DNA from: Macrostomum lignano
Taxonomy: Eukaryota
Length of the DNA stretch: 64,000 nucleotides
Direction: 5' to 3'
Assembly: GCA_002269645.1 (NCBI GenBank)
Contig: NIVC01002057.1
Coordinates: forward strand, 1-64,000
Every line of letters begins with the position of its first letter. Position 1 is the stretch's first letter. The translations under genes and the position numbers were made by a program. Below are positions 476 to 17,646 of the stretch, one piece after another. The notes below the pieces were generated by a model. That model worked only from the letters and a program-made list of their open reading frames with translations. It searched no databases and was not told where the DNA came from.

Positions 476-1391
476 TCATTCGGCAATAACAGCATCACCA
501 ACAGAAAGCTCAAATTTGGCCGCCTTATCAGTAGTATTATCACTGGCAGTGGCGGACACGTACAGACCGAATTTCAACGCACCGCCTTTCATCTGGGACA
601 GGGTGCGCATGGGCTCGATTGTAGACTCGCCAGTGTCCTGGTCGATGCCAATCATGTCGCAGCTGGGTTGACATTGCGGAAGATAAATGTTTATTATCTA
701 GGCTTTTCGAATATTTAGTTCAAGTTCCTAGTCTTAGTTGACCTGGACCTACTCTGAAGCCTACTTGAGCTTGACCTTCTTTGTATCTTACTTGACCATC
801 GAGTTGACGTACAATGTACCTTAGTTGACCTTGCTTGACCTTTTCTGTAGCTTAGTTGACCTTGCTTGACTTTTTCTGTAGCTTAGCTGACCTTGCTTGA
901 CCTTTTCTGTGTAACTTACTTGACCTTGACCTTATTTGTCGTTTAATTGAACATGACCTTATTTGTACCCTAGCTGACCTTTTCTGTACCTTTTACTTAG
1001 CTGATCTTGAAGTTTGTGTACTTTAGTTGCCCTTGACCTTCTCTGTAATTAACTTAACTTTTACCTTCAATAAACCTAGTTGGCTTCAACCTTTTTCGAA
1101 GCTCCTTCACCCTAAGAATCTCTCAGACCTACCGAGTGCAGACTCCGTGAGCGGCAAACTGCCTACCGCCGATGCTCAGTCGAGTCCAGGACTCCTCGGA
1201 CATTGGCTGGCAACCCGAACCACCAGGTTGGCCCGAAATCTGGCCACCAGCTGGGACAGGTCCAGCGGGCTCTCTGGACCGATGCAGTCCAACAGGTGGG
1301 CGACACTGGCCTCGTTTAACAGCAGGAACTGCTGCTCGTTGGCTAGGGATATGGCCTGGTTGGGGAGGGGTTTCTGGCTGAGCTTAGTGAA

Positions 1392-1432
<41 letters not shown>

Positions 1433-4400
1433 CAGCGGACACTTACCTGCTCCCCAGTCTTGGCCAGCCGGTCGCCGTCCTGCCGCACCAGCCGGCACGG
1501 ATACCCAACAACGCTGTGGAGCCAGTCGGCCGCGGCCTGCCCGCAGTCCAGCAGGCGGACGCGACTGCCGCAGACGCGGCTGTGCAGGCAGAGAGCGGCA
1601 GTCTGGTGCCCGGCGTCCATTGGGACAACCGCATTTTGATCGCTGATGGGCGAGTTCAGAATCAGCAGCCGGCGTTGAATGTCCAGGAAGGGTCGGATCT
1701 GGAGTAACGAGGAATAGGATGCACATTGATATCCGGGTTGGCGACCATCTTTGAAGTGGTTGAGTGGCGATTTTATACTGCTCGTAGTTTAAGGGGCAAT
1801 TTTAGCATGGTTGAGGGGCAATTTTATAATGGCTGAGGGGCGATTATATAATAATTGAAGGGCGATTTCATAATTTGGGTTGAGGGGCGATTTATAATGG
1901 GGGTTGAGGGGCGATTCTACAGTGGCTGAGGGGCGATTTTATAGTGGTTGAGGGGCGATTATATAATGGTTGAAGGGCGATTTCATAATTTGGGTTGGGG
2001 GGCGATTTTATAGTGGTTGAGGGGCGATTTTATAATGGGGTAGTTGAGAAGGGGGTTATATTGGGGTGGTGGAGTGGCGGTTTTATAATGGGTGGTTGAG
2101 GGGCGATTCTTAGGCACATAAGGAGGCTAGCTAGTGTGTGGTTAATTGGCTAAACACAAAGAGTTAACGACAGCAACAAAAATCGTCATAAATCACCTGA
2201 CTAAGCCGCGGCTCCCGTTTCATAGTCAGACACAAGCCGGACTCGTTTACAACCATCCAGTGCCGGTCAAGATGAAAGCCGCGCCGATCTACGGGCCAAC
2301 TAGCGGCAACTTCAAAGGCGGCGCAAGATTTCACAGGATAGAGAAATATGCGGCCCAAATGGGGCCAGTGCGACTCCGCGGCCGCCTTTGACGCTGCTGA
2401 TTGGCCGCCGCGGCACAGGTTGGCCAGCTCGTCTCGGGACATTGACATCAAAGGCGCCGACGCCGCCGCAGCCAACAATACCGGCATAGGTTTTGTTATT
2501 ACAAAATTGTCCGTTACCATAGCAACCAGAGCGTCGGCGTCGGATTCGTCCGACATGTAGCCAAATGAGGCTCGGACAGCGCCGGTAGGTCGGCCGTCGA
2601 CTAGATCGACACCGTCGCCGCACACGTGGCCGGCGCGAAGATTAGCCAACAGCTGTTCGTCCGTGATGTCCAGATAGCGCTGGCAGGCGCCCACGTTGCA
2701 GAAGCAGCCCACTCGGAGCTTTGGCGAGTAGGGTTGGGGTGGGGAAGGGCCATTTTATAGGGGTCAGGGTGGCTGACTGACTGACTGACTGACTGACTGA
2801 CTGACTGACTGACTGACTGACTGACTGACTGACTGACTGACTGACTGACTGACTGACTGACTGACTGACTGACTGACTGACTGACTTGAGTGAGTGGGTG
2901 ACTGGCTGACTGACTGACTGACTGACTGACTGACTGACTGACTGACTGACTGACTGACTGACTGACTGACTTGAGTGAGTGGGTGACTGACTGACTTGAG
3001 TGAGTGGGTGACTGACTGACTTGAGTGAGTGGGTGACTGACTGACTTGAGTGAGTGGGTGACTGACTGACTTGAGTGAGTGGGTGACTGACTGACTTGAG
3101 TGAGTGGGTGACTGGCTGACTGACTGACTGACCTGACTTAAAAGTAACAGCAATAAGTCGCACCTGTATCCGATAGTTTTCAGCCCTGGAGCTCAGATCC
3201 GAATAGCCAACAAAGCTACCATCGCAGCGCACTAAATTGAAAGCCACAATGCCGCCCTGCTTAGTCCAGTCCGTATAGTCATTATCGGTGTACAGCAGGC
3301 AAACAGGGGAGCCGTCAGAGTGGCGCAGCTCGCTTAAACGCCGGGCCAAGTACTGGGCCAGGCGAAAGACTCGCTGACTGATCTGCTGCATCCCGCCGCC
3401 AAGCTGTTCGAGAGCCCATAAGCCGTGACGCACTGCTAGGATGCTCAGATAGTTTATGGTGCCGTCTTCGAAACCGGCGGCAAGGTCCGGCGACTGCTGG
3501 ACGAACGAGCCGGATGGGACCATCGCCTGCCACCGATTTCAGAGAGTCTTTCTTTGTAGGTCTAACATTTTTGGCGATTCTTGAGGGCGATTTATAAAAT
3601 CGATACTTAAAGGCGATTCTATGGGGCGATTCAGGGCGATTCTTGTGGTTGATTATAGGGGGAAGGAAGCGATTAATATTCAATAAAAGCGATTCTTAAA
3701 GGCGATTCTTAGGGGCGATTATTGGGTGCGATTCTTAAGGGCGATTTTTGGGGACGATTCTTGAGGGCGATTCTTAAAGGCGATTCTTTAGGGCGATTCT
3801 TGAGGGCGATTATTGGGGACGATTCTTAAGGGCGATTTTTGGGGACGATTCTTAAGGGCGATTTTTGGGGACGATTCTTAAGGGCGATTCTTGAGGGCGA
3901 TTATTGGGGACGATTCTTAAGGGCGATTATTGGGGGCGATTCTTAAGGGGGATTTTTGGGGACGATTCTTGAGGGCAATTCTTGAGGGCGATTCTTGTGG
4001 GTGATTCTTGAGGGCGATTCTTGAGGGCGATTTTTAAGGGCGATTTTTGGGGACGATTCTTGAGGGCGATTCTTGAGGGCAATTCTTGGGGGCGATTCTT
4101 GAGGGCGATTCTTGAGGGCGATTCTTGAGGGCGATTCTTGAGGGCGACTCTTGAGGGCGATTCTTGTGGGCGATTCTTGCGGGCGATTCTTGAGGGCGAT
4201 TCTTGTGGGCGATTCTTGAGGGCGACTCTTGAGGGCGATTCTTGAGGGCGATTCTTGAGGGCGATTCTTGGGGGCGATTCTTAAAGGCGAGCGATTCTTC
4301 AGGGCGATTCTTGCGGGCGATTATTGGGGGCGATTCTTAAGGGCGATTTTTGAGGGCGATTTTTGCGGACGATTCATGTGGGTCTCTTGAGGGCCAGTTG

Positions 4401-5731
4401 CTAAAAGCAGTTAATAGCAGTGCCTAATAACCTCAATTAGCTATTTATGTTTCATCATAAGAGATTCACTGATGATAAACAAGTGCAGAAAAGTAAAAAC
4501 AATTTTGCTTCACCTGCACGGTACCACCGCCAAAGTAGGCCTTCTTAAGCACCGATTCACCATTGGCCACTCTATCCAGCCGCACAATGAGAGCTCCGAG
4601 GCCCGTAGGGTAGCCAAACATTTTATAAAACGATAAGCAGACAAAATCAGCCGAACAAGCTGTCAGATCCAATGGACAGGTGGCGGCAAATGATGCAGCA
4701 TCCAGCAGCACGTACGCGTCTTTATTATTGGCTTTCAATCGGTCCACAATGCTTAAATCCAGTTTCCTGCCGGAGAAATTGCACTGAGCAGGCAGGGCAA
4801 ACAGAACGCGACCGTCACTACTACTGCTAGTAGCTGATTCCAGCTCCAGCTCAGTCCTGCTGCACCTCACAACGAATCCTCTGGACCGGAGCACTTCCCG
4901 CATGCCAACAATAGAGGTGTGCGAGTCTAATAAATAATTAAACAAACCAGCGCCGTGCTGGCCTGCTTGGAAACTCTCGGCTAAAATTTTCACTGCAGCC
5001 GTGGCGCCGGATGTGAAAATGACAGCATGCTGCTGGTTGCTGGTGTTGAAATGTTTCAGCACAGAGTTGCGAGCCTCCTCAACTAGGCGACTGGTGTGAG
5101 CACTTTTGCGGGCCTGGCGAGATGCAGGGAGGGAGAGGAGACAGATATGGGATAGGAGGGATAGGAGGTATGAAGGGAGGGATAGAGCCTAGAGGAGATG
5201 AAGGGAGGAATAGAGGAGGTGAAGGGAGGGATATAGGAGATGAAGGGAGGGATATAGGAGATGAAGGGAGGGATAGAGGATATGAAGGGAGGGATAGAGG
5301 AGATGAAGGGAGGAATAGAGGAGATGAAGGGAGGGATAGAGGATATGAAGGGAGGGATAGAGGAGATGAAGGGAGGAATAGAGGAGATGAAGGGAGGGAT
5401 AGAGGATATGAAGGGAGGAATATAGGAGATGGAGCGAGGGATAGGGGAGATGAAGGGAGGGATAGAGGAGATGAAGGGATGAATGATGGGAGACAAACAT
5501 GCAGGAAGACAGTGTAAAGAAAGGAAAGACGGAGAGAGAGTAAATCCAAGAGCCAAGTTAAACAGACGTTACCTGAGTATGCGGATTGCCATATAACCCC
5601 GACTGCAGCTCCTGCATCACCCTGGTCAGCTGCCTCTCCGAATAGAGAGTGGCGCCTGCATGATCCAGATAGACATAATCGTTTAGTTGGGGAAATTCCA
5701 ACTGCCTGAGCTGCCTGACGTCCATTGGCAT
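476..5731 (-). CDS. MOCOS: Molybdenum cofactor sulfurase (NifS-like PLP domain + MOSC domain), 7 exons, ~777 aa if the exon-6 frameshift is corrected
   Basis: Exons (minus): 5731-5573, 5113-4514, 3526-3164, 2718-2197, 1698-1447, 1382(or 1373)-1133, 662-476, all GT-AG. Motifs: YLDHAGATLYS, GNPH, FTSGATAA, LLDAAS, PLP-lysine SFYKMFGYPTGLGAL, FEDGT, persulfide GCFCNVGACQ, GAVRASFGYMS, MOSC IFLYPVKSC, SLANEQQFLL, RFRANLVV, CTRCDMIGIDQDTG. Stop TGA at 476-478; AATAAA (minus) at 281-286. Confidence 0.95.
735..1060. repeat. Degenerate TTGACC-core tandem array (MOCOS intron 6)
   Basis: Repeated ttgacctt/cttgacc units. Confidence 0.75.
1393..1431. repeat. (GACA)n microsatellite (MOCOS intron 5)
   Basis: Direct observation. 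Confidence 0.95.
1790..2110. repeat. Degenerate GAGGGGCGATT array (MOCOS intron 4)
   Basis: Repeated ggttgaggggcgatt units. Confidence 0.8.
2772..3135. repeat. (TGAC)n microsatellite with TTGAGTGAGTGGG interruptions (MOCOS intron 3)
   Basis: Direct observation. Confidence 0.95.
3575..4375. repeat. ~13-bp CTTGAGGGCGATT array (MOCOS intron 2)
   Basis: Direct observation. Confidence 0.9.
5140..5480. repeat. 21-bp purine-rich minisatellite (MOCOS intron 1)
   Basis: Unit GAGATGAAGGGAGGGATAGAG. Confidence 0.9.
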
Positions 5732-5888
5732 GCAAAAATATCAGTAGAAATACTGCTAATTTAAAGATATATAGACACTACTATAGATGCTTCATAAAAA
5801 TCATACTACTTACTTAATAACTGAAGGCTGTTTATAGATAGATATACTACTTACTTAAGTAGCTGTTGTAAGGGGTTGTAGCCTAGCA

Positions 5889-6190
5889 GGGACTGTAGCC
5901 TAGTGGTAAGGGTGTCGGACTCACGACTGAAAGGTCGGGGGTTCGATTCCCGATCCCACCTCGGAAAAATTTGTGTCCTTGAGCAAGACATTTAACTCTG
6001 TATTGCTTCAGTTCACCCAGCTGTAAAATGGGTGCCAGCATTAACTGGGGTATTTGAGGCTGTGTGGCGACCCCCCAGTCCTTGGACTGAACAGCCTTAC
6101 GCAGCCTTCAGATGCGCCGCGCAATAGCTGCGGCTGAGCTGTCGGTTGCACATCTGCTTAATTGGGGCAGGTGTAATCAATTATTATTAA
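5889..6190 (+). mobile_element. tRNA-derived SINE with CORE-like central domain
   Basis: tRNA-like head 5889-5957 with A box TAGCCTAGTGG and B box GGTTCGATTCCC. It is followed at 5971-6032 by TTGTGTCCTTGAGCAAGACATTTAAC..TGCTTCAGTTCACCCAGCTGTAAAATGGG, resembling the MIR/CORE-SINE core. ATT-rich tail near 6180-6190. Confidence 0.75.
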
Positions 6191-6549
6191 CGAGTAGCTA
6201 CGAGTGTCAAAATTCTGCAAAAATCTTGAGTAATTACATACGAGTTACTTATAAAACAGCCAATTATTTAAAGAACTCAAACTAACTCGAACTTTAGTAC
6301 TGTTGAATAGTAAGACAAAAGCATTTATTTGTTGGATCATATATTGCAAAACAAAGATCTCTGCAGACTAGTAAAGTTTGTATTTCGCAGCACATACCGT
6401 AAAATACTCACTAAAATAAACTTAAAAAATTGATTTATTATTAAAATCACAGCACCTGAAGAAGTTTGCGAAGTAGTGATGAAGAGGAACTCCGCTACTA
6501 GGGAATCGAATGGATTTTAGAGCCAACAAAAAGGTGTGAGAAGGTGTGA

Positions 6550-7112
6550 GAAGCGCCAAAAAGGCCATGGGAGGCGCCAAATAGGGAATGAGAGGCGCCG
6601 AATATAGGGGTGTGAGAGGCGCCGAATAGAGGGGTGTGAGAGGCGCCGAATAGAGGGGTGTGAGAGGCGCCGAATAGAGGGGTGAGAGGCGCCGAATAGA
6701 GGGGTGTGAGAGGCGCCAAATAGAGAATGAGAGGCGCCGAATAGAGGGGTGTGAGAGGCGCCAAATAGAGGGGTGTGAGAGGCGCCAAATAGGGAATGAG
6801 AGGTGCCGAATAGAGGGGTGTGAGAGGCGCCGAATAGAGGGGTGTGAGAGGCGCCGAATAGAGGGGTGTGAGAGGCGCCGAATAGAGGGGTGTGAGAGGC
6901 GCCAAATATGGGGGTGTGAGAGGCGCCAAATATGGGGGTGTGAGGCGCCAAATATGGGGGTGTGAGAGGCGCCAAATAAGGGGTGTGAGAGGCGCCGAAT
7001 AGGGGGATTGAGAGGCACCAAAAAGGGGGTGTGAGAGGCACCAAAAATAGGGATGTGAGAGGCGCCAAATATGGGGGTGTGAGAGGCGCCAAATATGGGG
7101 TGGGGGAGGCGC
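6550..7112. repeat. 24-bp minisatellite
   Basis: Unit GAGAGGCGCCGAATAGAGGGGTGT. Confidence 0.9.
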
Positions 7113-7232
7113 CAAAAAGTAACTGATTGATTAATTAATGAACTGATTGCAGATAATTTATTGCACAACTTTAATTTTTGAAATCATGTTAAAAAACCGT
7201 TTACTTCAAAAGCCAATTAAAAGTACACGCTG

Positions 7233-7724
7233 TCACCCTAACTCGTACCAAGCAGTGGAGTTGTGCTCAAAATCAGCCAGAGAGATTCGAGCCGAGCCCA
7301 GCAACACGCCCCGACTAAGACGCGCCGCCGGGCCAGGCAGAATGCTCTTGCTCTTCGGTTTCCTATGCAGCACTCGAACCCGCAGGTAACGATAAGACAA
7401 TTCAATTTCGTTCACTTGAAAATCAAACGACTCATCGAACACAGGCGTGAGAGTGGAGCGCGCTGTACCGGTGCGCTTGCTCTGCTTCTTGGATTGCTGA
7501 TTAGCATAAGCAGAAGATTCCGCTGCTTCTATGGAGAATTTTACGTAGGGATTGCAGAGATTTGTGTCTACGGTGGGGCCCGCTGTCTGCGGCAGCAGCT
7601 GCACCCGGTGGCAGGCCAGCACCAGGCTCTGCCGGGCCGGGCTGTAGCGGAGGGTCAGCTCGATGCGGCCGAGGCGCTCGGCATAGCTCGGGTCCGACTG
7701 CTGCCGCTGCTGCTCTTGCTGCTC
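7233..7724 (-). CDS. Orphan C2-domain exon paralogous to the C-terminal C2 of the neighbouring extended synaptotagmin
   Basis: Acceptor ctctgattgcttccAG|GAG at 7724, open in phase 0 for 163 codons: EQQ..ERLGRIELTLRYSPARQSLVLACHRVQLL..NPYVK..TLTPVFDESFDF..LLGSARISLADFEHNSTAWYELG*. No in-frame Met; in-frame TAA at 7743-7745 upstream; AATAAA (minus) at 7157-7162. Confidence 0.8.
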   Translation of the reverse strand, partial: EQQEQQRQQSDPSYAERLGRIELTLRYSPARQSLVLACHRVQLLPQTAGPTVDTNLCNPYVKFSIEAAESSAYANQQSKKQSKRTGTARSTLTPVFDESFDFQVNEIELSYRYLRVRVLHRKPKSKSILPGPAARLSRGVLLGSARISLADFEHNSTAWYELG

Positions 7725-7837
7725 CTGGAAGCAATCAGAGAGTTAATTTTTTAGTACTAGTAGATCTAGAGATAAAAAATTCAGATGACAAGTGAGCATT
7801 CTATACACTATTTGGACTTCAGGACATTAGAATTCTG

Positions 7838-7843
7838 AGAGAC

Positions 7844-7874
<31 letters not shown>

Positions 7875-7876
7875 TA

Positions 7877-7911
<35 letters not shown>

Positions 7912-8320
7912 GGCAGACAGACAGACACGGAGACAGACACTGAGACAGACACTGAGACAGACACGGAGACAGACACTGAGTCAGACACGGAGACAGACAC
8001 TGAGACAGACACTGAGACAGACACTGAGTCAGACACTGAGACAGACACTGAGACAGACACTGAGACACACTGAGACAGACACTGAGACAGACACTGAGAC
8101 AGACACTGAGTCAGACACTGAGACAGACACTGAGACAGACACTGAGACACACTGAGACACACTGAGACAGACACTGAGACAGACACTGAGACAGACACGG
8201 AGACACACACTGAGACAGACACTGAGACAGACACTGAGACACACTGAGACAGACACTGAGACAGACACGGAGACAGACACTGAGACAGACACTGAGACAC
8301 ACTGAGACAGACATAGACAG
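7838..8320. repeat. (GACA)n grading into a 12-bp CTGAGACAGACA array
   Basis: Direct observation. Confidence 0.9.
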
Positions 8321-9169
8321 ACATCCCTATAGCACTTATTCAATCTTATCCAGCCAGCTAAAAAGTCAATAAGCAACAAAGCCAACAAGCAGTACTCGAA
8401 TGCCAATAGAATAAAAAAGCCAAGGCAACACGCTGACCCAATTAAATTGAATAGTTCACAGTGAACTACAGTGCTCATTAGCGAGAGAGAGTAAAATTGC
8501 TTCACACAAAAGACAGCAGCAAAAAGCAGTGCCAGCAGAAGCTAATAGAAGCCAGTCTAAATTTAGAAAAAAGACTACTAGAAAAAGTAACAATTAAAAG
8601 GAGATACAAAAAGGGAACAGAAACAGCTGGAGAGCAGTCTGTCTGATTGAACTTATTTGGCCAGCAATATTGATATAGAAATTCGGCACACCAAAACAAA
8701 ATAACTTGAGTACACAACTATATCAAATTGTACAGAGATAGATAAAATAGAAAAATCAATTATTAAACTTTCAAGGCAAGGTAAGCTGCAGATGGATAGG
8801 AGGAACAAAAAGTAGAATATAATTTTTAAAAACTGGTTTTAAAAATAAAATTTGGCTACGAATAACAGCAATTAAAGCCACTGATGATCTTCTTTACGAA
8901 ACGAAACTCGACTTGAAAAAATAAAAATAAATAGTTAAAATATATTAGCTGTTTGTACGGTAGTTTAGACAGAAATGATACATAAATCTCTATTGTCATC
9001 AGCATGAAAAACAAAGCACAGAACATATAAAAACGTCAATAATAAAAAAATGATAGAAATTGGCAAATAATGGCTTCATTTACACTAATGGAAACTGATT
9101 CAATGTTTAATAATCTGTTTTGATAAATAAGAGAGACAAACTTAGATAGAAATAGGATTAAAAGACATA

Positions 9170-10225
9170 GATCAAATCTCAAATCCCCCAAAAGAGATCG
9201 CTTGAATCCCCAAAATCCCTACGGAAGATTGCTCAAATTCCAAATCCCCATAAGAGATTGCTCAAATTCCAAATCCCAATAAGAGCTTGCTCAAATCCCC
9301 TCAAGAGATTGCTCAATTTCTCACAAGAGATTTCTCAAATTCTCACAAGAGATTGCTCAATTTCTCACAAGAGATTGCTCAAGTTCTCACAAGAGATTGC
9401 TCAAATTCTCACAAGAGATTGCTCAATTTCTCACAAGAGATTGCTCAAGTTCTCACAAGAGATTGCTCAAATCCCCACAAGAGGTTGCTCAAATCCCTAC
9501 AAGATATTGCTCACATCCCCATAAGAGTTGGCTCAAATCCTCACAAGAGTTTGCTCAAATCCCCACAAGAGATTGCTTAAATCCTCACAAGAGATTGCTC
9601 AAATCCCCATTAAGAGATGCTCAAATCCCAAATCCCCATAAGAGATGCTCAAATCCCAAATCCCAATAAGAGATTGCTCAAATCCCAAATCTCCATAAGA
9701 GATGCTCAAATCCCAAATCCCAATAAGAGATTGCTCAAATCCCAAATCTCCATAAGAGATGCTCAAATCCCAAATCCCCATAAGAGATGCTCAAATCCCA
9801 AATCTCCATAAGAGATGCTCAAATCCCAAATCACCATAAGAGATGCTCAAATCCCAAATCCCCATAAGAGATGCTCAAATCCCAAATCTCCATAAGAGAT
9901 GCTCAAATCCCAAATCTCCATAAGAGATGCTCAAATCCCAAATCCTCATAAGAGATGCTCAAATCCCAAATCTCCATAAGAGATGCTCACATACCAAATC
10001 CCCATAAGAGATGCTCAAATCCCAAATCTCCATAAGAGATGCTCAAATCCCAAATCTCCATAAGAGATGCTCAAATCCCAAATCCCCATAAGAGATGCTC
10101 AAATCCCAAATCTCCATAAGAGATGCTCAAATCCCAAATCCCCATAAGAGATGCTCAAATCCCAAATCCCCATAAGAGATGCTCAAATCCCAAATCCCAA
10201 TAAGAGATTGCTCAAATCCCCAACC
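9170..10225. repeat. Composite 22-bp / 28-29-bp minisatellite
   Basis: Units TCACAAGAGATTGCTCAAATTC, then ATAAGAGATGCTCAAATCCCAAATCCCC. Confidence 0.9.
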
Positions 10226-10321
10226 CCAATGAGAAAACAAAACAAATCTAAAAAAACAAAGCACCTGCATAGCAAAGGTGTGAAATACCGAGAGTCCAGA
10301 AACCACTTGTCAATCAATCAG

Positions 10322-13300
10322 TCACTCGTCGCCAGCCATCCCAGCAGCCGTCTTCAAATCGTACCAAACAGTAGCGGCATTCTGCTCCAAATCTGCCAGT
10401 GCAATGCTGGCCAAGCCAATCTGATGGTTCTTGCCGCCAATCAGTTTGCCGCACTGCTTCATCAAAGCCACGCAGAGCGAGCTGCTGGATAAGTCGGACT
10501 CTGGCAGGGAGAATTCGAAAGACTCGTCATAAACTGGGTTCCTAGTAGCTTTCATCGTCTTAGTCTTCTGCTTCTTTGAAGACACAGCGCCTCGACTGTC
10601 GGATTTGATGTAGAGCTTAGCGTACGGATCCAAGCTCGAGTCGTCCGTAGCAACGGTTGCTATGGGCAAGTCGGCTTGGTGGCACACCACTACAAGGCAT
10701 TGGCGCGGCTGGCTGTAGCGGATGGTAAGCTGCACTCTGCCCTGCTGAGATGGTGCGGCGGCGGTTGCGGCGGCGGGTGCGGCGGCGGGTGCGGCGGCGG
10801 GTGCATTCTTTCGCTGCCGGACACCATCGCTGTCCGAGTTGGTTGAAATTGTATTAGCGGCCTCGGGTTCATCTTGAGCTTCAGCCTGAGCTGGTTCGGC
10901 TGCCTCAGCTGCAGGTATCGTTTTAACGGGAATTTCGGCTGGAGCTTCGTATTGGCCTTCAACAATGGCGCGAAGGGCCAGGAACAGGACGATCTGGGGG
11001 TGGGGGTGATTTTTATATGAAGATTTATAAAAAACTGAGCTAATTTTCATAGGCAAAAAACGTTTCTGGAGGATTCGGAATGGAAGCATTCTGACATGAA
11101 GTAAACAGAATGACAATGGCACTTTTCAATACAAATGGCACTACTCAGACTTAAAATGGCACTATTCAGGACACACAATGGCACTACTCAGACTCACAAT
11201 GGCACTACTCAGACTCAAAATGGGCACTATTCAGGACACAATGGCACTACTCAGACTCAAAATGGCACTATTCAGGACACACAATTGCACTACTCAGACT
11301 CAAAATGGCACTATTCAGGACACACAATGGCACTACTCAGACTCAAAATGGCACTATTCAGGACACACAATGGCACTACTCAGACTCAAAATGGCACTAC
11401 TCAGACACAAAACGGCACTACTCAGACTCAAAATGGCACTATTCAGGACACACAATGGCACTACTCAGACTCAAAATGGCACTATTCAGGACACACAATG
11501 GCACTACTCAGACTCAAAATGGCACTACTCAGACACAAAATGGCACTACTCAGACACAAAATGGCACTACTCAGACACAAAATGGCACTACTCAGACTCA
11601 AAATGGGCACTATTCAGGACACACAATGGCACTACTCAGACTCAAAATGGGCACTATTTAGGACACACAATGGCACTACTCAGACTCAAAATGGCACTAT
11701 TCAGGACACACAATGGCACTACTCAGACTCAAAATGGTACTATTTAAATAAAAATGGCACTACTCAGACTCAAAATGGTACTATTTAAATAAAAATGGCA
11801 CTACTCAGACTCAAAATGGTACTATTTAAATACAAATGGCACTACTCAGACACAAAATGGAACCACCACTAAGGCACAAAATGGCACTACTTAGACACAA
11901 AATGGCACTACTCAGACACAAAATGGCACTACTCAGACACAAAATGGCACTACTCAGACACAAAATGGCACTACTCAGACACAAAATGGCACTACTCAGA
12001 CACAAAATGGCACTACTCAGACACAAAATGGCACTACTCAGACTCAAAATGGCACTATTCAGGACACACAATGGCACTACTCAGACTCAAAATGGCACTA
12101 TTCAGGACACACAATGGCACTACTCAGACTCAAAATGGCACTATTCAGGACACACAATGGCACTACTCAGACTCAAAATGGCACTATTTAGGTCACACAA
12201 TGGCACTACTCAGACTAAAAATGGCACTATTCAGGTCGCACAATGGCACTACTCAGACTCAAAATGGTACTATTTAAATAAAAATGGCACTACTCAGACT
12301 CAAAATGGTACTATTTAAATAAAAATGGCACTACTCAGACACAAAACGGCACTACTCAGACACAAAATGGCACTACTCAGACACAAAATGGCACTACTCA
12401 GACACAAAATGGCACTACTCAGATACAAAATGGCACTACTCAGACACAAAATGGCACTACTCAGACACAAAATGGCACTACTCAGACACAAAATGGCACT
12501 ACTCAGACACAAAATGGCACTACTCAAATTAAAAAACGGCATAAATAGGGCATAAAAAACTGCACTAAAGATAGAGCACTATCTTCTCACCTGAGACTGC
12601 GTCCCACTGTCAGTATTGAGATCCCAGGCCCTATGCAGCTGCATGTTGGCCTCCTGCAGCAGGAAGCGCAGCGGTATTTGCACCTGCCCAAGGCGCCGCC
12701 GACCTCTGTGCAGAACGGTCAGCTGTACGCTTGCAATAGAAGGCTCGGATACAAAAAAATGAAACGGCGCTTCGAATATCGGATTTGGCGAGTCCTCAAA
12801 AGTGGCGGTGCGCTGCGCGTCGGTTGAGCTGCTGCCACTGCCCCCGCCTCCGCCCGTCACGCTAATTTCCACCTGGAGGTTTTAGCAGCAATTATTTATA
12901 GATTAGGGGATCAACAAATTAGGCTGTCCACTCTCTGGCCTTCGTAGTGTATTTAATAGGGCTTGATAATTAAACTTATAGTTTGCTAATATGCGAGACA
13001 ATACGTGTTATTTTGTGTAGGTTGGAGGTGAGATTCCCAATCAGTACATTAGAGGGCGAGATTTCCCATGTGTACATTGCGGAGGGTGGGATTCCCAATG
13101 TGTAAATTTTGGGGAGTGGGATTCCCCATGTATAAACTGTGGAGCGTGGGATTTGGGATTCCCCATGTGTACATTTTGGAGGGTGGGATTCCCATGTGTA
13201 CATTTTGGAGGGTGGGATTCTCCATGTGTACATTGTTGAGGGTGGGATTAACTATGTGTACATTGCGAGCGCCTAGTGGTGGGATTCCCTTATATGTACA

Positions 13301-16300
13301 TAGGAACAGGGGGTGGTTCGATGACATAAGCACACCTGTGCCAGACTCAGTCAGGGGAATTAGCTGTACTTACCAGAGCTGAAGGCTCCTGGCCGCACTT
13401 CACCGTGGGCAGAGAGCGGCAGCAGTCAACGCCGACGTACAGGAAGGCCCGGCTGAACTCGCCGCCACCGCTGCCTCGTGTGCTGGGCGCCTGGCAACCG
13501 GTTATTAAAAGGAGTTCATGACTATTTATCAAGACTGAACCTTAAGACCTTAAGATCTTAATCTCTTTATACTCTATGTTCCGATCTCCCTACATCTTTT
13601 CTTAGTCTTCTCTCAATATATCTCAGCCTCTCTTCCCAACATCTCATATCAGCCTCCCTTCCCAACATCTCATCTCAGCCTCCCTTCCCTACATCTCATC
13701 TCAGCCTCCCTTCCCTACATCTTATCTCAGCCTCCCTTCCCTACATCTCATATCAGCCTCCCTTCCCAACATCTCATATCAGCCTCCCTTTCCAACATCT
13801 TATCTCAGCCTCCCTTCCCTACATTTCATCTCAGCCTCCCTTCCCTACATCTCATCTCAGCCTCCCTTCCCAACATCTCATCTCAGCCTCCCTTCCCTAC
13901 ATCTCATCTCAGCCTCCCTTCCCTACATCTCATCTCAGCCTCCCTTCCCAACATCTCATATCAGCCTCCCTTCCCAACATCTCATATCAGCCTCCCTTCC
14001 CAACATCTCATCTCAGCCTCCCTTCTCTACATCTCATCTCAGCCTCCCTTCTCTACATCTCATCTCAGCCTCCCTTCTCTACATCACATCTCAGCCTCCC
14101 TTCCCTACATCACATCCCAGTCACCTTAACCTGATCCCAGCCTCCCACACCGATCTCAACAGACTCAGCGCCCACCTGAAACAAGGCCGTGTCCATCAGG
14201 TTGGCCCAGCTCATCCGCAGCCTAACCGAGCCAGTGTCCACATCATCCAGTTTCAGCCAGGTATCTAGAACGCCTTCCCTAGCAACGCTGCCCAGATCGA
14301 CTTTAGCAGATCCCAACTCATCGTCCTTAGATCCGGCATCCTCGTCGAACAGTTCAATATCCAATAGCTGACCCTGTCGCACATCGACTGCGGCCTCGAA
14401 TGCGGCGTTCCACACGGGATTAAGCGAGTTGGCAATCGCTTTGGTTGTGTACTTTTGCGAGCCGACTGTTACTATGGCGTAGGGATCGGACTTGCCGGAC
14501 CTGATCAGGCCCACGTCGCTGCGTTTGAGGTCTCGAGCCTCCACTACCTGCATTGCATATGGGTGGTGGAGCATTAACCAGCTGGGAGTGGGATAACCGA
14601 TGGGATAATAATCCCCATGAAACTATACATAGGATTATCCGATGGGATAATAATCCCCATGAAACTATACATAGGATTATCTGATGGGATAATAATCCCC
14701 ATGAAACTACACAACATAGTATTAACCGATAGGATAATAATCCCCATGAAACTATACATAGGATTATCCAATGGGATAATAATCCCCATAAAACTATACA
14801 TAGGATTATCCAATGGGATAATAATCCCCATGAAACTATACATAGGATTATCCGATGGGATAATAATCCCCATAAAACTATACATAGGATTATCCGATGG
14901 GATAATAATCCAATGAAACTAAACATAGGATTATCCAATGGGATAATAATCCCAAACTCTGACACTAAAATCCATGGGAAAATTATCCCCAAACAGATGC
15001 ATATAGGTAGATTTGAAACGAAATATTTCACCTTAAACCGAAGAACCCCCTGCGGCAGGATCCACTTCATAGCGGTCAGGTCCACATCGCCAGCCAAAGG
15101 AACCAACAGCCTATTAGGCACAACCAACTGAGCAGAGATTTGATCGGAAACCACTTTGACAAGCATCTGCCTCAAGCCTGGCAGGTCCAGTATGTTTCCC
15201 AGATCGGTCAGGTCAAAGTTCAAATACGGCACGGAAAGAAACGTGACTGTGACGCAGGCGGCGATAGGTATCCGAGGGATCAGTGGCGAGATTACGACAC
15301 GGAGAATGCCGCGCAATTCGATACTTTTGATGCCAGCTTTGATGCCTTTTGTTTTCATTTCGATTTTAGCGTCGCCATAGTAGATTAAGTCCATGTCCAT
15401 CACTATTTCCGAACGGCGAGTGTTGTCGCCCGTGTACACCTGGTTAATGTGTTTGAGGCGGCACCGGGATATTAGAGCACATTATTGAGTACGGGATATT
15501 CAATTTCTAAGGATTAGATTGGGGATAATGGGATTTGAGGCAGTGGGTTGGGGATAATGGGATTTGAGGCAGTGGATTGGGGATAATGGGGGATTTGAGG
15601 CAGTGGATTGGGGATAATGGGGGATTTGAGGCAGTAGATTGAGGATAATAGGGGATTTGAGGCAGTGGATTGGGGATAATGGGGGATTTGAGGCAGTAGA
15701 TTGAGGATAATAGGGGATTTGAGGCAGTGGATTGGGGATAATGGGGGATTTGAGGCAGTAACTTGAGGATAATGGGGGATTTGAGGCAGTGGATTGGGGA
15801 TAATGGGGGATTTGAGGCAGTTGATTGAGGATAATGGGCGGTTTGAGGCAGTAGATTGAGGATAATGGGGGATTTGAGGCAGTGGATTAGGGATAATGGG
15901 GGATTTGAGGCAGTAGATTGAGGATAATGGGGGATTTGAGGCAGTGGATTGAGGATAATTTGGGATTTGAGGCAGTAGATTGAGGATAATGGGGGATTTG
16001 AGGCAGTGGATTGAGGATAATGGGGGATTTGAGGCAGTAGATTGAGGATAATGGGGGATTTGAGGCAGTGAATTGAGGATAATGGGGGATTTGAGGCAGT
16101 GAATTGAGGATAATTTGGGATTTGAGGCAGTAGATTGAGGATAATGGGGGATTTGAGGCAGTGGATTGGGGATAATTTGGGATTTGAGGCAGTAGATTGA
16201 GGATAATGGGGGATTTGAGGCAGTGGATTGGGGATAATGGGGGATTTGAGGCACTAGCTTGAGGATAATGGGCGGTTTGAGGCAGTAGATTGAGGATAAT

Positions 16301-17646
16301 GGGGGATTTAAGGTAGTGGATTAGGGATAATGGGATTTGAAGCAGTGACTACGGATAATAAGATTTGAAGCAGTGGATTGGGATAATGGGGGATTTGAAG
16401 CAATGTATTGGGAATAGTGAGATTTGAGGCAGCCAATACATGTAGACTTGGAATAATAGGATTTAAGGTTGGTATCAAAATATATGGGATTAAAAATGAC
16501 GACGATTTGATACCCATGATAAATATTGGATTACTATATTAATAATTCAACACTAACCTTGACTCCGCCAAAACGTGGCGCTATATCGCCCAGATCCAGT
16601 CTAGAAAATCGTAAGTCCTGAATCACCCCAGGCAGGTTGTCCCTAACCCCGGGCATGATCTGTTTCTCAATGATTAACACTGCGTAATCCTTGACGAATG
16701 GCCAGGCCTGCTTGATAATGGAGTTCAGCCATTCGGCCCGCTCCACATCCGGGAAGAACACCCAGGATGGCAGGTTCTCCACGTTAGCCAGGAACTGGCG
16801 CTCGTCTCTGGGTGAGGGAATGAAGCACACAATTATTTAAGTACTCTTTGCAATTTGCATCATAAATTAACACCCGCGTAAGTGATAGATAGGGGGTCCA
16901 GCAACTGGGGATCTGGGAGGCTGGCCCAGCAACTGACACTCTGGGAGGCTGGCCCAACAACTGGGGATCTGGGAGGCTGGCCCAGCAACTGACACTCTGG
17001 GAGGCTGGCCCAGCAACAGAGGATCTGGGAGGCTGGCCCAGCAACTGACACTCTGGGAGGCTGGCCCAACAACTGGGGATCTGGGAGGCTGGCCCAGCAA
17101 CTGAGGATCTGGGAGGCTGGCCCAACAACTGGGGATCTGGGAGGCTGGCCCAGCAACTGACACTCTGGGAGGCTGGCCCAACAACTGGGGATCTGGGAGG
17201 CTGGCCCAACAACTGGGGATCTGGGAGGCTGGCCCAACAACTGGGGATCTGGGAGGCTGGCCCAGCAACTGAGGATCTGGGAGGCTGGCCCAACAACTGG
17301 GGATCTGGGAGGCTGGCCCAGCAACTGACACTCTGGGAGGCTGGCCCAGCAACTGAGGATCTGGGAGGCTGGCCCAGAAAATGAGAATCTGGTACACAAG
17401 AGCCTCTAAGACTTCTTACCTAGCCAATGCTTGGAAAGCCTTAGTTCGCACCTTCCTTTGCTCTTTAATGTAACTGGTGATGATGTAAGCCAGCACAGCA
17501 ACTACCAGCCAGGTTACACTGAAGCCCAGATAGCCGATAAGCCAGACGCCGGTTACAAGACCAAATAGTTTAAAGAATCGTTTAATTTGCTCCAGCAGCT
17601 GCTGCTCAATGCTGCGAGCATGCGCCTCGCTAGCCGATTGGTTCAT
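10322..17646 (-). CDS. ESYT: Extended synaptotagmin (ESYT2/3-type: hairpin TM, SMP, C2A, C2B, C2C), 7 coding exons, ~775 aa
   Basis: Exons (minus): 17646-17420, 16807-16558, 15439-15032, 14547-14176, 13490-13374, 12872-12591, 10993-10322; summed length 2328 nt, in frame. Motifs: WLIGYLGFSVTWL, LPSWVFFPDVERAEWLN (SMP start), DLGDIAPRFGGVKVY, C2A with Ca-type Asp residues (SD..KSDPY..FDEDAGSKDDELG), terminal C2 GRVQLTIRYS..NPVYDESFEF..WYDL. Confidence 0.95.
11115..12530. repeat. 21-bp minisatellite (ESYT intron 6)
   Basis: Unit AAAATGGCACTACTCAGACAC and variants. Confidence 0.9.
13050..13285. repeat. ~30-bp degenerate array (ESYT intron 5)
   Basis: Unit about GGGATTCCCATGTGTACATTTTGGAGGGT. 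Confidence 0.8.
13620..14110. repeat. 26-bp minisatellite (ESYT intron 4)
   Basis: Unit ATCTCATCTCAGCCTCCCTTCCCTAC. Confidence 0.9.
14590..14955. repeat. 42-bp minisatellite (ESYT intron 3)
   Basis: Unit ATGGGATAATAATCCCCATGAAACTATACATAGGATTATCCG. Confidence 0.9.
15500..16430. repeat. 31-bp minisatellite (ESYT intron 2)
   Basis: Unit GGGGATAATGGGGGATTTGAGGCAGTGGATT. Confidence 0.9.
16900..17380. repeat. 28-bp minisatellite (ESYT intron 1)
   Basis: Unit CTGGGAGGCTGGCCCAGCAACTGACACT. Confidence 0.9.

What the first reader, a model, noticed from the sequence alone, without database searches (positions are those of the whole stretch)
7233..7724. Met-less duplicate of the ESYT terminal C2 domain: alternative last exon, or a gene whose start codon comes from the spliced leader
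Seen: a complete C2 domain colinear with ESYT C2C (GRIELTLRYSPARQSLVLACH vs GRVQLTIRYSQPRQCLVVVCH; PVFDESFDF vs PVYDESFEF; AWYEL vs VWYDL) but strongly diverged. It has a good phase-0 acceptor, its own AATAAA 70 nt after the stop, no in-frame ATG anywhere, and a stop codon just upstream of the acceptor. Model A: mutually exclusive terminal exon joined from the phase-0 donor at 12591, swapping the plasma-membrane-binding C2. This would drop the last C2B strand (IVLFLALR), and I found no good internal donor in exon 7. Model B: the flatworm SL ends in AUG and is known to be able to supply the initiator Met (shown in schistosomes). SL-AUG|GAG CAG would be exactly in frame and give a free ~164-aa C2 protein that might compete with ESYT at ER-PM contacts.
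Basis: partly seen in the sequence, partly recalled or inferred. Interest (0 to 1): 0.75.

Follow-up and report, generated by a model that had tools for sequence, protein, structure and literature searches.

The report
Start-codon-less stand-alone C2 domain gene
Next to the flatworm Macrostomum lignano's extended-synaptotagmin gene lies an old, still protein-coding copy of that gene's last C2 domain with no start codon of its own; it most likely gets its AUG from the trans-spliced leader, a mechanism already known in flatworms.

Summary
Window 7233-7724 (minus strand) is an open 163-codon exon. It encodes a complete C2 domain (Pfam E 1.7e-12; AlphaFold model with eight strands) that is 39% identical to the C2C domain in the last exon of the ESYT gene 2.6 kb upstream.

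The window is Macrostomum lignano (assembly Mlig_3_7). GenBank already annotates this exon as a separate 5'-partial gene (PAA65617.1, Mlig025581.g1). Its CDS starts on the first base after the TTCCAG acceptor. That annotation pipeline cuts transcripts at spliced-leader (SL) read peaks.

The duplication is ancient and the copy has stayed coding:
- Synonymous sites are saturated (pS 0.74) while pN is 0.38.
- Identity by codon position is 0.58/0.70/0.34.
- Between homeologous loci the exon differs 3.4-fold less than its unique flanks (p = 0.003).

The ORF contains no Met. The M. lignano SL ends in ...TTGCATG, and its AUG is in frame at 7724 and at a second acceptor at 7718.

Model B (SL-supplied AUG, 164-aa basic free C2 protein) is the best reading, at about 0.55. 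No RNA read was inspected here. It is a new member of a known kind, of moderate interest.

The parts
7233..7724 (-). C2' exon: 163 codons plus TGA (7235-7233). Encodes a disordered Gln/Glu-rich leader of about 18 aa and a complete ESYT-C2C-type C2 domain. It contains no Met.
   Evidence: GenBank PAA65617.1 is the equivalent in locus L001.
7725..7745 (-). 3' splice site region: taa ctc tct gat tgc TTCCAG. AG at 7726-7725; in-frame TAA at 7745-7743. Fits the M. lignano trans-splice acceptor motif [T/C]TNCAG.
   Evidence: motif from PMC8629364.
7718..7723 (-). GAGCAG: the six bases between the main acceptor (exon start 7724) and a second in-frame acceptor (AG at 7720-7719, exon start 7718). The CDS annotated on this contig (P0001, 161 aa) starts at 7718.
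   Evidence: Weak evidence, because almost every codon boundary in this CAG-rich stretch follows an AG.
7157..7162 (-). AATAAA poly(A) signal, 70 nt after the C2' stop. It is the first minus-strand AATAAA downstream of the ESYT stop codon in this contig.
10322..10993 (-). ESYT exon 7, the parent of the duplicate. It encodes the last C2B strand (IVLFLALR), a linker with VRQRK, the C2C domain and the stop (10324-10322).
10322..17646 (-). Extended-synaptotagmin gene: seven exons, 775 aa (SMP_LBD plus three C2 domains). Exons: 17646-17420, 16807-16558, 15439-15032, 14547-14176, 13490-13374, 12872-12591, 10993-10322. The donors of exons 2-6 are all phase 0.
7746..10321 (-). Putative outron / intercistronic region. 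The ESYT stop-to-acceptor interval (7725-10321) is 2.6 kb, of which about 1.46 kb is minisatellite (7883-8323, 9213-10228). It holds an AT-rich unique core (8330-9200) with ATTAAA at about 9111 but no AATAAA.

Best explanation
The exon is an independent gene, annotated Mlig025581. It arose by an ancient tandem duplication of the 3' part of the last exon of the neighbouring ESYT gene (end of the linker plus the C2C domain).

The proposed mechanism has three steps.
1. The exon is transcribed on the same strand as ESYT, probably as the downstream cistron of an ESYT read-through pre-mRNA.
2. The M. lignano spliced leader is trans-spliced to the TTCCAG acceptor at 7724, and sometimes to the acceptor 6 nt downstream.
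3. Because the SL ends in AUG, the mature mRNA reads ...UUGCAUG|GAG CAG.... The SL AUG opens a 164-codon ORF (MEQQEQQRQQ...WYELG), which ends at the TGA and is polyadenylated after the AATAAA at 7162-7157.

The product would be a soluble, basic (pI about 9.5) single-C2 protein of about 18.5 kDa. It has no membrane anchor, no SMP domain and no Ca2+-ligand aspartates. It most likely binds acidic phosphoinositide-rich membranes as ESYT C2C does, and so could modulate or compete with ESYT tethering.

Shown here: the domain, its descent from ESYT C2C, long-term coding constraint, the lack of any AUG, the reading-frame relation to the SL, and the separate 5'-partial annotation.

Inferred: the trans-splicing event itself, translation from the SL AUG, operon-type transcription, and the function.
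For: 1. Identity and origin.
- C2 domain by Pfam.
- In 117 of 120 ESYTs the best match of this exon is the last C2.
- PDB hits include 2dmg, the E-Syt2 C2C domain.
- The AlphaFold model has pLDDT 79.7, pTM 0.74 and eight strands.
- It shares a beta3-beta4 loop insertion with the M. lignano C2C.

2. It is coding.
- Against C2C: pS 0.74 (saturated) versus pN 0.38, with identity by codon position 0.58/0.70/0.34.
- An open frame arises in only 0.26% of shuffles.
- Between homeologs L001 and L003 the exon shows 5/492 differences against 53/1529 in unique flanks (Fisher p 0.003). The C2 core has 0/285.

3. It needs an external AUG.
- There is no Met in the 163 aa, and a TAA lies 21 nt upstream in frame.

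4. The SL route fits.
- The M. lignano SL is CGGTCTCTTACTGCGAAGACTCAATTTATTGCATG, and its acceptor motif [T/C]TNCAG matches TTCCAG here.
- The AUG is in frame at both acceptors.

5. Annotation.
- The Mlig_3_7 annotation is built from RNA-seq, with transcripts cut at SL-read peaks and ORFs called by TransDecoder.
- It lists this exon as a separate 5'-partial gene in three loci. The CDS starts exactly at the acceptor in L001 (163 aa) and 6 nt downstream on this contig.
- With the upstream TAA, an ORF without Met can be called only if the transcript starts within 2 nt of the acceptor.

6. Precedent.
- Use of the flatworm SL AUG as initiator Met is established: Cheng et al. 2006, as cited in PMC9851317 and PMC12582326.

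7. Operon-like context.
- Same strand as ESYT. The stop-to-acceptor distance is 2598 nt, of which about 1457 nt is tandem repeat. That is near the repeat-adjusted threshold of 1 kb or less used for M. lignano operons.
- There is no AATAAA between the ESYT stop and this gene's own signal on this contig.
Against: - No SL-containing read, cDNA or peptide was inspected. The trans-splice site is inferred from where the annotated CDS starts.
- The start at 7718 is uninformative on its own, because nearly every codon boundary there follows an AG.
- The exact sequences M+EQQ... and M+QEQQ... are not in the 15-billion-protein collection. That collection seems to lack Macrostomum transcriptomes altogether.
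- Of the five homeolog differences four are non-synonymous, so recent constraint may be relaxed.
- Divergence along the locus is heterogeneous. ESYT exons 3-7 and their introns are almost identical between the homeologs, so the low exon divergence could partly reflect gene conversion.
- One copy (L002) has a 1-nt deletion that breaks the frame between the acceptor and the C2 domain. L002 differs from the window only by single-base indels, so this is probably an assembly error.
- The -3 position of the SL AUG is U, a weak Kozak context.
- The ESYT donors of exons 2-6 are all phase 0, so cis-splicing into 7724 would also be in frame.
- No ortholog from another species was available.
Confidence: 0.55

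Rival explanations
1. Alternative 3'-terminal exon of ESYT, used by cis-splicing. A phase-0 ESYT donor is joined to 7724, giving an ESYT isoform whose membrane-binding C2C is replaced by C2'. The donor could be that of exon 6 at 12591 or that of exon 4 at 14176 (SMP-C2A-C2'). The acceptor might be shared between cis- and trans-splicing, as described for parasitic flatworms.
For: - The donors of exons 2-6 are all phase 0 and the acceptor is phase 0.
- There is no AATAAA between the ESYT stop and 7162 on this contig.
- The exon 4 donor would leave C2A intact.
- An older gene model (UniProt A0A1I8JRL4, P0004) joins ESYT sequence to exactly this acceptor.
- Extensive sharing of 3' splice sites between cis- and trans-splicing is reported in flatworms.
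Against: - Exon 6 joined to C2' removes the conserved last C2B strand (IxLxLxLRIL), which is encoded by the first codons of exon 7.
- Exon 7 has no in-frame GT[AG]AG donor; the only candidate is the weak att|GTTGAA at 10964.
- The evidence-based annotation keeps the two genes separate in all three loci and calls the C2' CDS 5'-partial rather than linked.
- The P0004 junction uses a donor on the ESYT stop codon. It is in frame only because of an extra base in the error-rich ML2 assembly. On the window sequence it would give a tail of about 22 aa and a stop, not C2'.
- L001 has an AATAAA in the intergenic core.
Confidence: 0.15
2. Untranslated relic. The exon is a decaying partial duplicate, transcribed only as part of ESYT read-through or 3'-UTR, or as a trans-spliced RNA that is not productively translated. 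Its open frame is residual.
For: - It has no AUG of its own.
- It is annotated only as 'hypothetical, partial'.
- Four of the five homeolog differences are non-synonymous.
- One copy carries a frameshifting deletion.
- No close homolog is found in any database.
Against: - Synonymous sites against the parent are saturated, while second codon positions are still 70% identical and the frame is open over 163 codons. That is not expected of a sequence that lost coding constraint early.
- The exon is 3.4-fold less diverged than its flanks between homeologs, and the C2 core shows 0/285 differences.
- All columns that are invariant in ESYT C2C domains are kept.
- The AlphaFold model is a confident, complete C2 fold.
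- The exon has its own acceptor, stop and AATAAA.
Confidence: 0.17
3. The gene has its own promoter and an unrecognised upstream exon with an ATG, located in the 2.6-kb spacer or further upstream, that is cis-spliced to 7724.
For: The spacer has an AT-rich unique core of about 0.9 kb. One ATG mini-ORF there has a phase-0 GTAAAG donor (9026/9005/8999 to 8898).
Against: - That candidate encodes a hydrophobic AT-rich peptide with no homology. It is the only one apart from two trivial ORFs of 1 and 5 codons inside the repeats.
- The RNA-seq-based annotation would have included such an exon and called a complete CDS. Instead the CDS is 5'-partial and starts at the acceptor.
Confidence: 0.05

Closest known systems
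C2C domain of extended synaptotagmins (e.g. human E-Syt2 C2C, PDB 2DMG; C2C of the adjacent M. lignano ESYT)
   Same: - Same domain type and fold. It is the best-matching domain in 117 of 120 ESYTs.
- 29% identity to 2dmg, ranked third in Foldseek, and 39% identity to the neighbouring C2C.
- It keeps the GRIxLTLRYS, DPYVK-like, NPVFDE and WY(D/E)L motifs and a basic beta3-beta4 region.
- It lacks the Ca2+-ligand aspartates in the loop 3 region (sequence), in keeping with the Ca2+-independent behaviour reported for ESYT C2C (my knowledge, not tested).
   Different: - It is not attached to a hairpin anchor, an SMP domain or C2A/C2B.
- It is more basic: domain pI 9.8 against 7.8.
- It has Asp to Asn in the loop 1 motif (NPY instead of DPY), a longer beta3-beta4 loop and a basic insertion of about 10 aa in the beta6-beta7 loop.
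- It is encoded by its own gene.
SL-AUG-initiated mRNAs of flatworms (Cheng, Cohen, Ndegwa and Davis 2006, J Biol Chem 281:733; 'slORFs', PMC9851317)
   Same: The SL ends in AUG. The recipient exon has no in-frame AUG of its own. The SL AUG is in frame with a conserved ORF.
   Different: The mechanism was shown experimentally for Schistosoma mansoni genes. Here trans-splicing and translation are inferred only from annotation and sequence. In addition, the recipient is a domain-sized partial duplicate of the upstream gene, not an ordinary gene.
M. lignano operons and TBONE-defined trans-spliced genes (Wudarski et al. 2017, PMC5730564; Ustyantsev and Berezikov 2021, PMC8629364)
   Same: Same-strand neighbour genes, a repeat-rich spacer, a downstream gene that begins at a YTNCAG acceptor, and its own poly(A) signal.
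   Different: The poly(A) site of the upstream ESYT is unknown, so the repeat-adjusted distance cannot be fixed (1141 nt or less from stop to acceptor). Whether the pair was classed as an operon by those authors could not be looked up.
Alternative last exons that swap a C-terminal domain
   Same: Tandem paralogous terminal coding exons, each with its own stop and poly(A) signal, and compatible splice phases.
   Different: The natural exon boundary lies inside C2B, so the swap would break that domain. The annotation does not link the exons.

Membership tests
C2 domain (Pfam PF00168) | Significant match to the family HMM over its full length | tested here: met
   E 1.7e-12, 47.9 bits (cut-off 22); profile positions 8-104 of 104.
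C2 domain (Pfam PF00168) | Eight-stranded beta-sandwich | tested here: met
   AlphaFold2 model with pLDDT 79.7 and pTM 0.74. Eight strands: 19-28, 33-43, 59-67, 82-84, 95-103, 112-120, 140-148, 156-162. Foldseek probability 1.00 to Syt1 C2A and E-Syt2 C2C.
Extended synaptotagmin (ESYT) protein family | N-terminal membrane hairpin plus SMP lipid-transfer domain, followed by C2 domains | tested here: not met
   The 163/164-aa product has only the C2 domain. The hairpin, SMP_LBD and three C2 domains are in the separate upstream 775-aa gene. C2' derives from an ESYT domain, but its product is not an ESYT.
Extended synaptotagmin (ESYT) protein family | The terminal C2 is of the C2C type | tested here: met
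   The best match in 117 of 120 ESYTs is the C-terminal C2. All ten invariant columns of a 20-sequence C2C alignment are kept.
SL-AUG-initiated ORF (flatworm slORF) | The species' SL ends in AUG | tested here: met
   From the literature: the M. lignano SL is ...CAATTTATTGCATG (PMC8629364). The species was identified from the GenBank contig NIVC01002057.1.
SL-AUG-initiated ORF (flatworm slORF) | The SL is actually trans-spliced to the acceptor at the ORF start | not testable with these tools
   Only indirect evidence. The annotated 5'-partial CDS begins at the acceptor, in an annotation that cuts at SL-read peaks, and the acceptor fits YTNCAG. No reads were accessible.
SL-AUG-initiated ORF (flatworm slORF) | The SL AUG is in frame with a conserved ORF that has no usable AUG of its own | tested here: met
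   AUG|GAG CAG... is frame 0. There is no Met in the 163 aa, and a TAA lies 21 nt upstream. Coding constraint is shown.
SL-AUG-initiated ORF (flatworm slORF) | Translation starts at the SL AUG | not testable with these tools
   Needs Ribo-seq, N-terminal proteomics or reporter assays.
M. lignano operon (criteria of Ustyantsev and Berezikov 2021) | Same orientation, downstream gene SL-trans-spliced, repeat-adjusted intergenic distance of 1 kb or less | tested here: inconclusive
   Same strand. Stop-to-acceptor distance is 2598 nt minus about 1457 nt of tandem repeats, which leaves 1141 nt including the unknown ESYT 3'-UTR. The ESYT poly(A) site and the SL reads were not available.
Alternative / mutually exclusive terminal exon of ESYT | In-frame junction that yields intact domains | tested here: not met
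   For the proposed exon 6 donor, the phase fits but the last C2B strand is lost. There is no good in-frame donor inside exon 7. Only the exon 4 donor would give intact domains.
Alternative / mutually exclusive terminal exon of ESYT | Transcripts linking ESYT exons to the exon | not testable with these tools
   The annotation keeps them as separate genes. The only linking model (P0004) is a frameshift-ridden prediction on the older assembly.

The most novel reading that the evidence does not exclude
A domain-sized fragment of a gene (linker end plus C2C of ESYT), duplicated in tandem without promoter or start codon, became a new protein-coding gene merely by acquiring a trans-splice acceptor. 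The spliced leader supplies the cap, the 5'-UTR and the only AUG, and the gene rides on its parent's transcription as an operon-like downstream cistron. The resulting free, highly basic C2C-like protein acts as a soluble modulator or decoy of ESYT-mediated ER-plasma-membrane tethering. This would be a concrete case of SL trans-splicing lowering the barrier to gene birth from partial duplicates.
Probability: 0.3. Interest if true: 0.6.

Novelty: new member of a known kind. Interest (0 to 1): 0.4.

Why it matters
If confirmed, three things follow.

1. The GenBank entry 'hypothetical protein, partial' would in fact be a complete gene once the SL AUG is counted. This bears on annotation: TransDecoder-style ORF calling on SL-trimmed transcripts will systematically label such genes partial.

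2. It would be a clean example of how an SL that ends in AUG lets a promoter-less, ATG-less partial duplicate survive as a gene.

3. It would give M. lignano, a transgenesis-capable flatworm, a natural free C2C domain with which to probe ESYT tethering.

None of this changes established concepts. SL-AUG initiation and flatworm operons are already known.

Tried and rejected
- **Protein search with the C2' exon**: only the protein itself was found.
- **Cluster look-up**: this gave the species and the GenBank name.
- **Protein search with ESYT exon 7**: swamped by the poly-Ala linker. Its only hit was the chimeric ML2 model P0004.
- **Protein search with ESYT residues 1-552**: returned ESYTs of other phyla at 42% identity or less. 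It returned no M. lignano isoform and no other Macrostomum species, so the databases hold no orthologs with which to test conservation or isoforms.
- **Exact look-ups** of the ESYT 775-aa protein, the Model A 715-aa protein, and M+EQQ... / M+QEQQ... in two alleles: none is in the collection, which is uninformative.
- **Literature**: 'Mlig025581' does not occur in any searchable main text or in the held supplements of PMC5816591, PMC8629364 and PMC5730564.
- **Exon chaining**: a brute-force search timed out. It was replaced by per-intron frame-consistent site listing.
- **SL RNA gene**: none in the window.
- **RNA scans**: no Rfam family and no tRNA.
- **L002's 152-aa ORF as a third start site**: rejected. 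It results from a 1-nt deletion, and L002 differs from the window only by indels, so it is probably an assembly error.
- **P0004's ESYT-C2' fusion as evidence for cis-splicing**: rejected. It is in frame only in the indel-rich ML2 assembly.
- **An in-frame ATG mini-exon in the spacer**: only an implausible AT-rich candidate was found.

Full report
**1. What is there**

On the minus strand, window 7724-7233 reads as 163 sense codons followed by TGA. The exon is preceded by ...taa ctc tct gat tgc ttc cag|GAG CAG CAA GAG.... This gives a pyrimidine-rich tract, an AG at 7726-7725, and an in-frame TAA seven codons upstream. The peptide contains no methionine.

The peptide is a C2 domain:
- Pfam PF00168 matches at E 1.7e-12, across nearly the whole profile.
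- An AlphaFold2 model built on a 20-sequence alignment gives pLDDT 79.7 and pTM 0.74. It has all eight strands and a disordered Gln/Glu-rich leader of about 14-18 residues.
- Foldseek places the model among synaptotagmin-type C2 domains. The human E-Syt2 C2C domain (2dmg) ranks third and has the highest sequence identity (sequence search).

An AATAAA lies 70 nt after the stop (7162-7157).

**2. Where the window comes from, and what is already annotated**

The exact peptide belongs to a three-member cluster from GenBank assembly GCA_002269645.1 (Macrostomum lignano Mlig_3_7). One member is PAA65617.1, 'hypothetical protein BOX15_Mlig025581g1, partial'. The window is the first 64 kb of contig NIVC01002057.1.

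Three homeologous or duplicate loci show the same gene order on one strand: ESYT (775 aa), then the C2-only gene, then a MOSC/aminotransferase-class-V gene.

I rebuilt the ESYT CDS as seven exons. It yields exactly 775 aa and has SMP_LBD plus three C2 domains. Its relatives in other phyla are named extended synaptotagmin-2-like.

**3. Relation to ESYT**

C2' is 39% identical to the C2C domain encoded in ESYT exon 7 (E 9e-25). In 117 of 120 ESYTs from other animals its best match is the C-terminal C2.

C2' and the M. lignano C2C share an enlarged beta3-beta4 loop that other ESYTs lack. This points to a duplication within the flatworm lineage. Even so, C2' is about as distant from its neighbour as from foreign C2C domains (28-38% identity), so the duplication is old.

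The duplicated segment starts in the linker. The QQRQQ in the C2' leader aligns with the conserved (L/V)RQRK linker motif. Only the 3' part of exon 7 was copied.

**4. Is it still a coding sequence?**

Comparison with the parent, over 132 aligned codons:
- Synonymous differences are saturated (pS 0.74) and pN is 0.38.
- Identity at codon positions 1/2/3 is 0.58/0.70/0.34.

If C2' had drifted neutrally for most of the time since the duplication, the second positions would be as randomised as the third. Only 0.26% of composition-matched shuffles keep the frame open.

Comparison between homeologs L001 and L003:
- The exon has 5/492 differences against 53/1529 in non-repetitive flanks (p 0.003). 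There are none in the 285 nt that encode the C2 core.
- Caveats: four of the five differences are non-synonymous. Divergence is also patchy along the locus, since ESYT exons 3-7 and their introns are almost identical between the homeologs.

L002 is identical to the window except for single-base indels. One of these is a 1-nt deletion in the leader, which explains its 152-aa ORF. Because the only differences are indels, I take this as an assembly error.

Overall, I consider the exon a protein-coding sequence under at least long-term constraint.

**5. How does it get a start codon?**

The M. lignano spliced leader is CGGTCTCTTACTGCGAAGACTCAATTTATTGCATG, and the enriched trans-acceptor motif is [T/C]TNCAG (PMC8629364). 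The acceptor here, TTCCAG, fits that motif, whereas only one of the six ESYT cis-acceptors does. Joining the SL gives ...UUGCAUG|GAGCAG..., with the AUG in frame. A second AG 6 nt downstream also keeps the frame.

The Mlig_3_7 annotation was made from RNA-seq. Its TBONE pipeline cuts transcriptional units at peaks of SL-containing reads and at poly(A) sites, and ORFs are called by TransDecoder (PMC5730564).

Given the upstream TAA and the absence of Met, an ORF beginning EQQEQQ can be called only if the transcript model starts within 2 nt of the acceptor. That is exactly what is annotated in L001 (163 aa). On this contig the CDS starts 6 nt later, after the second AG (161 aa). This is the expected signature of an SL site whose AUG was trimmed away with the leader.

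Use of the flatworm SL AUG as initiator is established. Cheng et al. 2006 found the AUG in frame in 28% of S. mansoni trans-spliced transcripts, and more than 40 cDNAs depend on it (as cited in PMC9851317; PMC12582326).

**6. The cis-splicing alternative**

The donors of ESYT exons 2-6 are all phase 0, so several in-frame junctions to 7724 are formally possible.
However, alignment with seven other ESYTs shows that the exon 6/7 boundary falls immediately before the conserved last C2B strand (I-x-L-x-L-x-L-R-I-L, here IVLFLALRAI). That strand would be lost.
- Inside exon 7 no in-frame GT[AG]AG exists. The only site that would retain this strand is the weak att|GTTGAA at 10964.
- The exon 4 donor (14176) would give a structurally sound SMP-C2A-C2' protein, but it would have to skip three exons.
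- On this contig there is no minus-strand AATAAA between the ESYT stop and 7162. L001 has one in the spacer, which is AATAAT here. An ATTAAA lies at about 9111. This is compatible with read-through of ESYT into the C2' exon, which both an operon-type precursor and an alternative last exon require.
- An older UniProt model (A0A1I8JRL4, P0004) joins the end of C2C directly to EQQEQQ through a donor that overlaps the ESYT stop codon. It needs an extra base and contains several further frameshifts. On the window sequence that junction would give a tail of about 22 aa and a stop. I regard it as a prediction artefact that merely confirms the strength of the acceptor.
- A scan of the spacer for an ATG mini-exon with a phase-0 donor found nothing credible.

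**7. Likely function (inference)**

The product would be about 18.5 kDa with a pI of about 9.5. The domain itself has a pI of 9.8, against 7.8 for the parental C2C.

It retains the basic beta3-beta4 segment (SKKQSKR) and adds a basic insertion (HRKPKSKS...RLSR). It has Asn in place of the loop 1 Asp and no acidic loop 3 residues.

By analogy with ESYT C2C, which is known from the literature (my own knowledge, not tested here) to bind PI(4,5)P2-rich plasma membrane, the free domain probably binds acidic membranes independently of Ca2+. It could modulate or compete with ESYT tethering.

**8. Verdict**

This is a real feature, correctly observed. It is best explained as a separately annotated, SL-dependent, ATG-less gene derived from an ancient partial duplication of ESYT's last exon.

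The mechanism belongs to a known kind (SL-AUG initiation in flatworm operon-like units). The particular gene, a stand-alone ESYT-C2C paralogue, appears undescribed beyond a 'hypothetical, partial' entry.

Confidence in the SL-AUG reading is about 0.55. The rivals are cis use as an alternative last exon (0.15), an untranslated relic (0.17) and an unseen ATG exon (0.05). Interest is moderate.

Noticed in passing
window 5728-5740 (minus); L001:11989-11992; L003:11988-11991: The annotated CDS of the downstream MOSC/aminotransferase-V gene (molybdenum-cofactor-sulfurase-like) starts with CCA immediately after a genomic ATG (5731-5729). The genomic TTTTTGCATG|CC shares TTGCATG with the 3' end of the SL, and no AG precedes the start. 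This looks like SL-trimming in the annotation pipeline clipping a genuine start codon, so that 'partial' CDS may be an artefact.
   Followed up: partly
window 1176-5728 (minus) versus L001:11992-17167 and L002:2539-7792: The MOSC-type gene product is 690 aa on this contig but 767 aa at the other two loci. The cause (annotation or assembly difference) was not examined.
   Followed up: no
window ~5893-5960 (sense on + strand): A tRNA-like sequence (...GTAGCCTAGTGGTAAGGGTGTCGGACTCACGACTGAAAGGTCGGGGGTTCGATTCCCGATCCCACC) lies between the C2' gene and the MOSC gene. ARAGORN and Rfam do not call it. It is probably the head of a tRNA-derived SINE.
   Followed up: partly
window 6543-7113, 7883-8323, 9213-10228, 11115-12526: Large minisatellite arrays (24/117-mer, 12-mer AGACAGACACTG, 22/28/29-mers, 21/43-mer) fill the intergenic spacers and ESYT intron 6. 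They make up more than half of the ESYT-to-C2' spacer.
   Followed up: partly
L002:1-2500 versus L003 (window 5200-8300): L002 (contig NIVC01001811) and the window contig differ by single-base indels only, with 0 substitutions across the compared exon and unique flanks (about 1.5 kb). This suggests the same haplotype assembled twice, with residual long-read indel errors. One such indel breaks the C2' leader frame in L002.
   Followed up: partly
P0004 (UniProt A0A1I8JRL4, older ML2 assembly): A chimeric, frameshift-ridden 362-aa gene model fuses pieces of ESYT C2A, C2B and C2C to the C2' exon through a donor that overlaps the ESYT stop codon (window ~10324) and the acceptor at 7724.
   Followed up: yes
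L001 versus L003, ESYT exons 3-7 (window ~10322-15439): The homeologs are almost identical across ESYT exons 3-7 and the adjoining intron ends (about 0.2% divergence). The region around C2' differs by 3-5% in unique sequence. This patchy divergence suggests gene conversion or a mosaic of haplotypes.
   Followed up: partly
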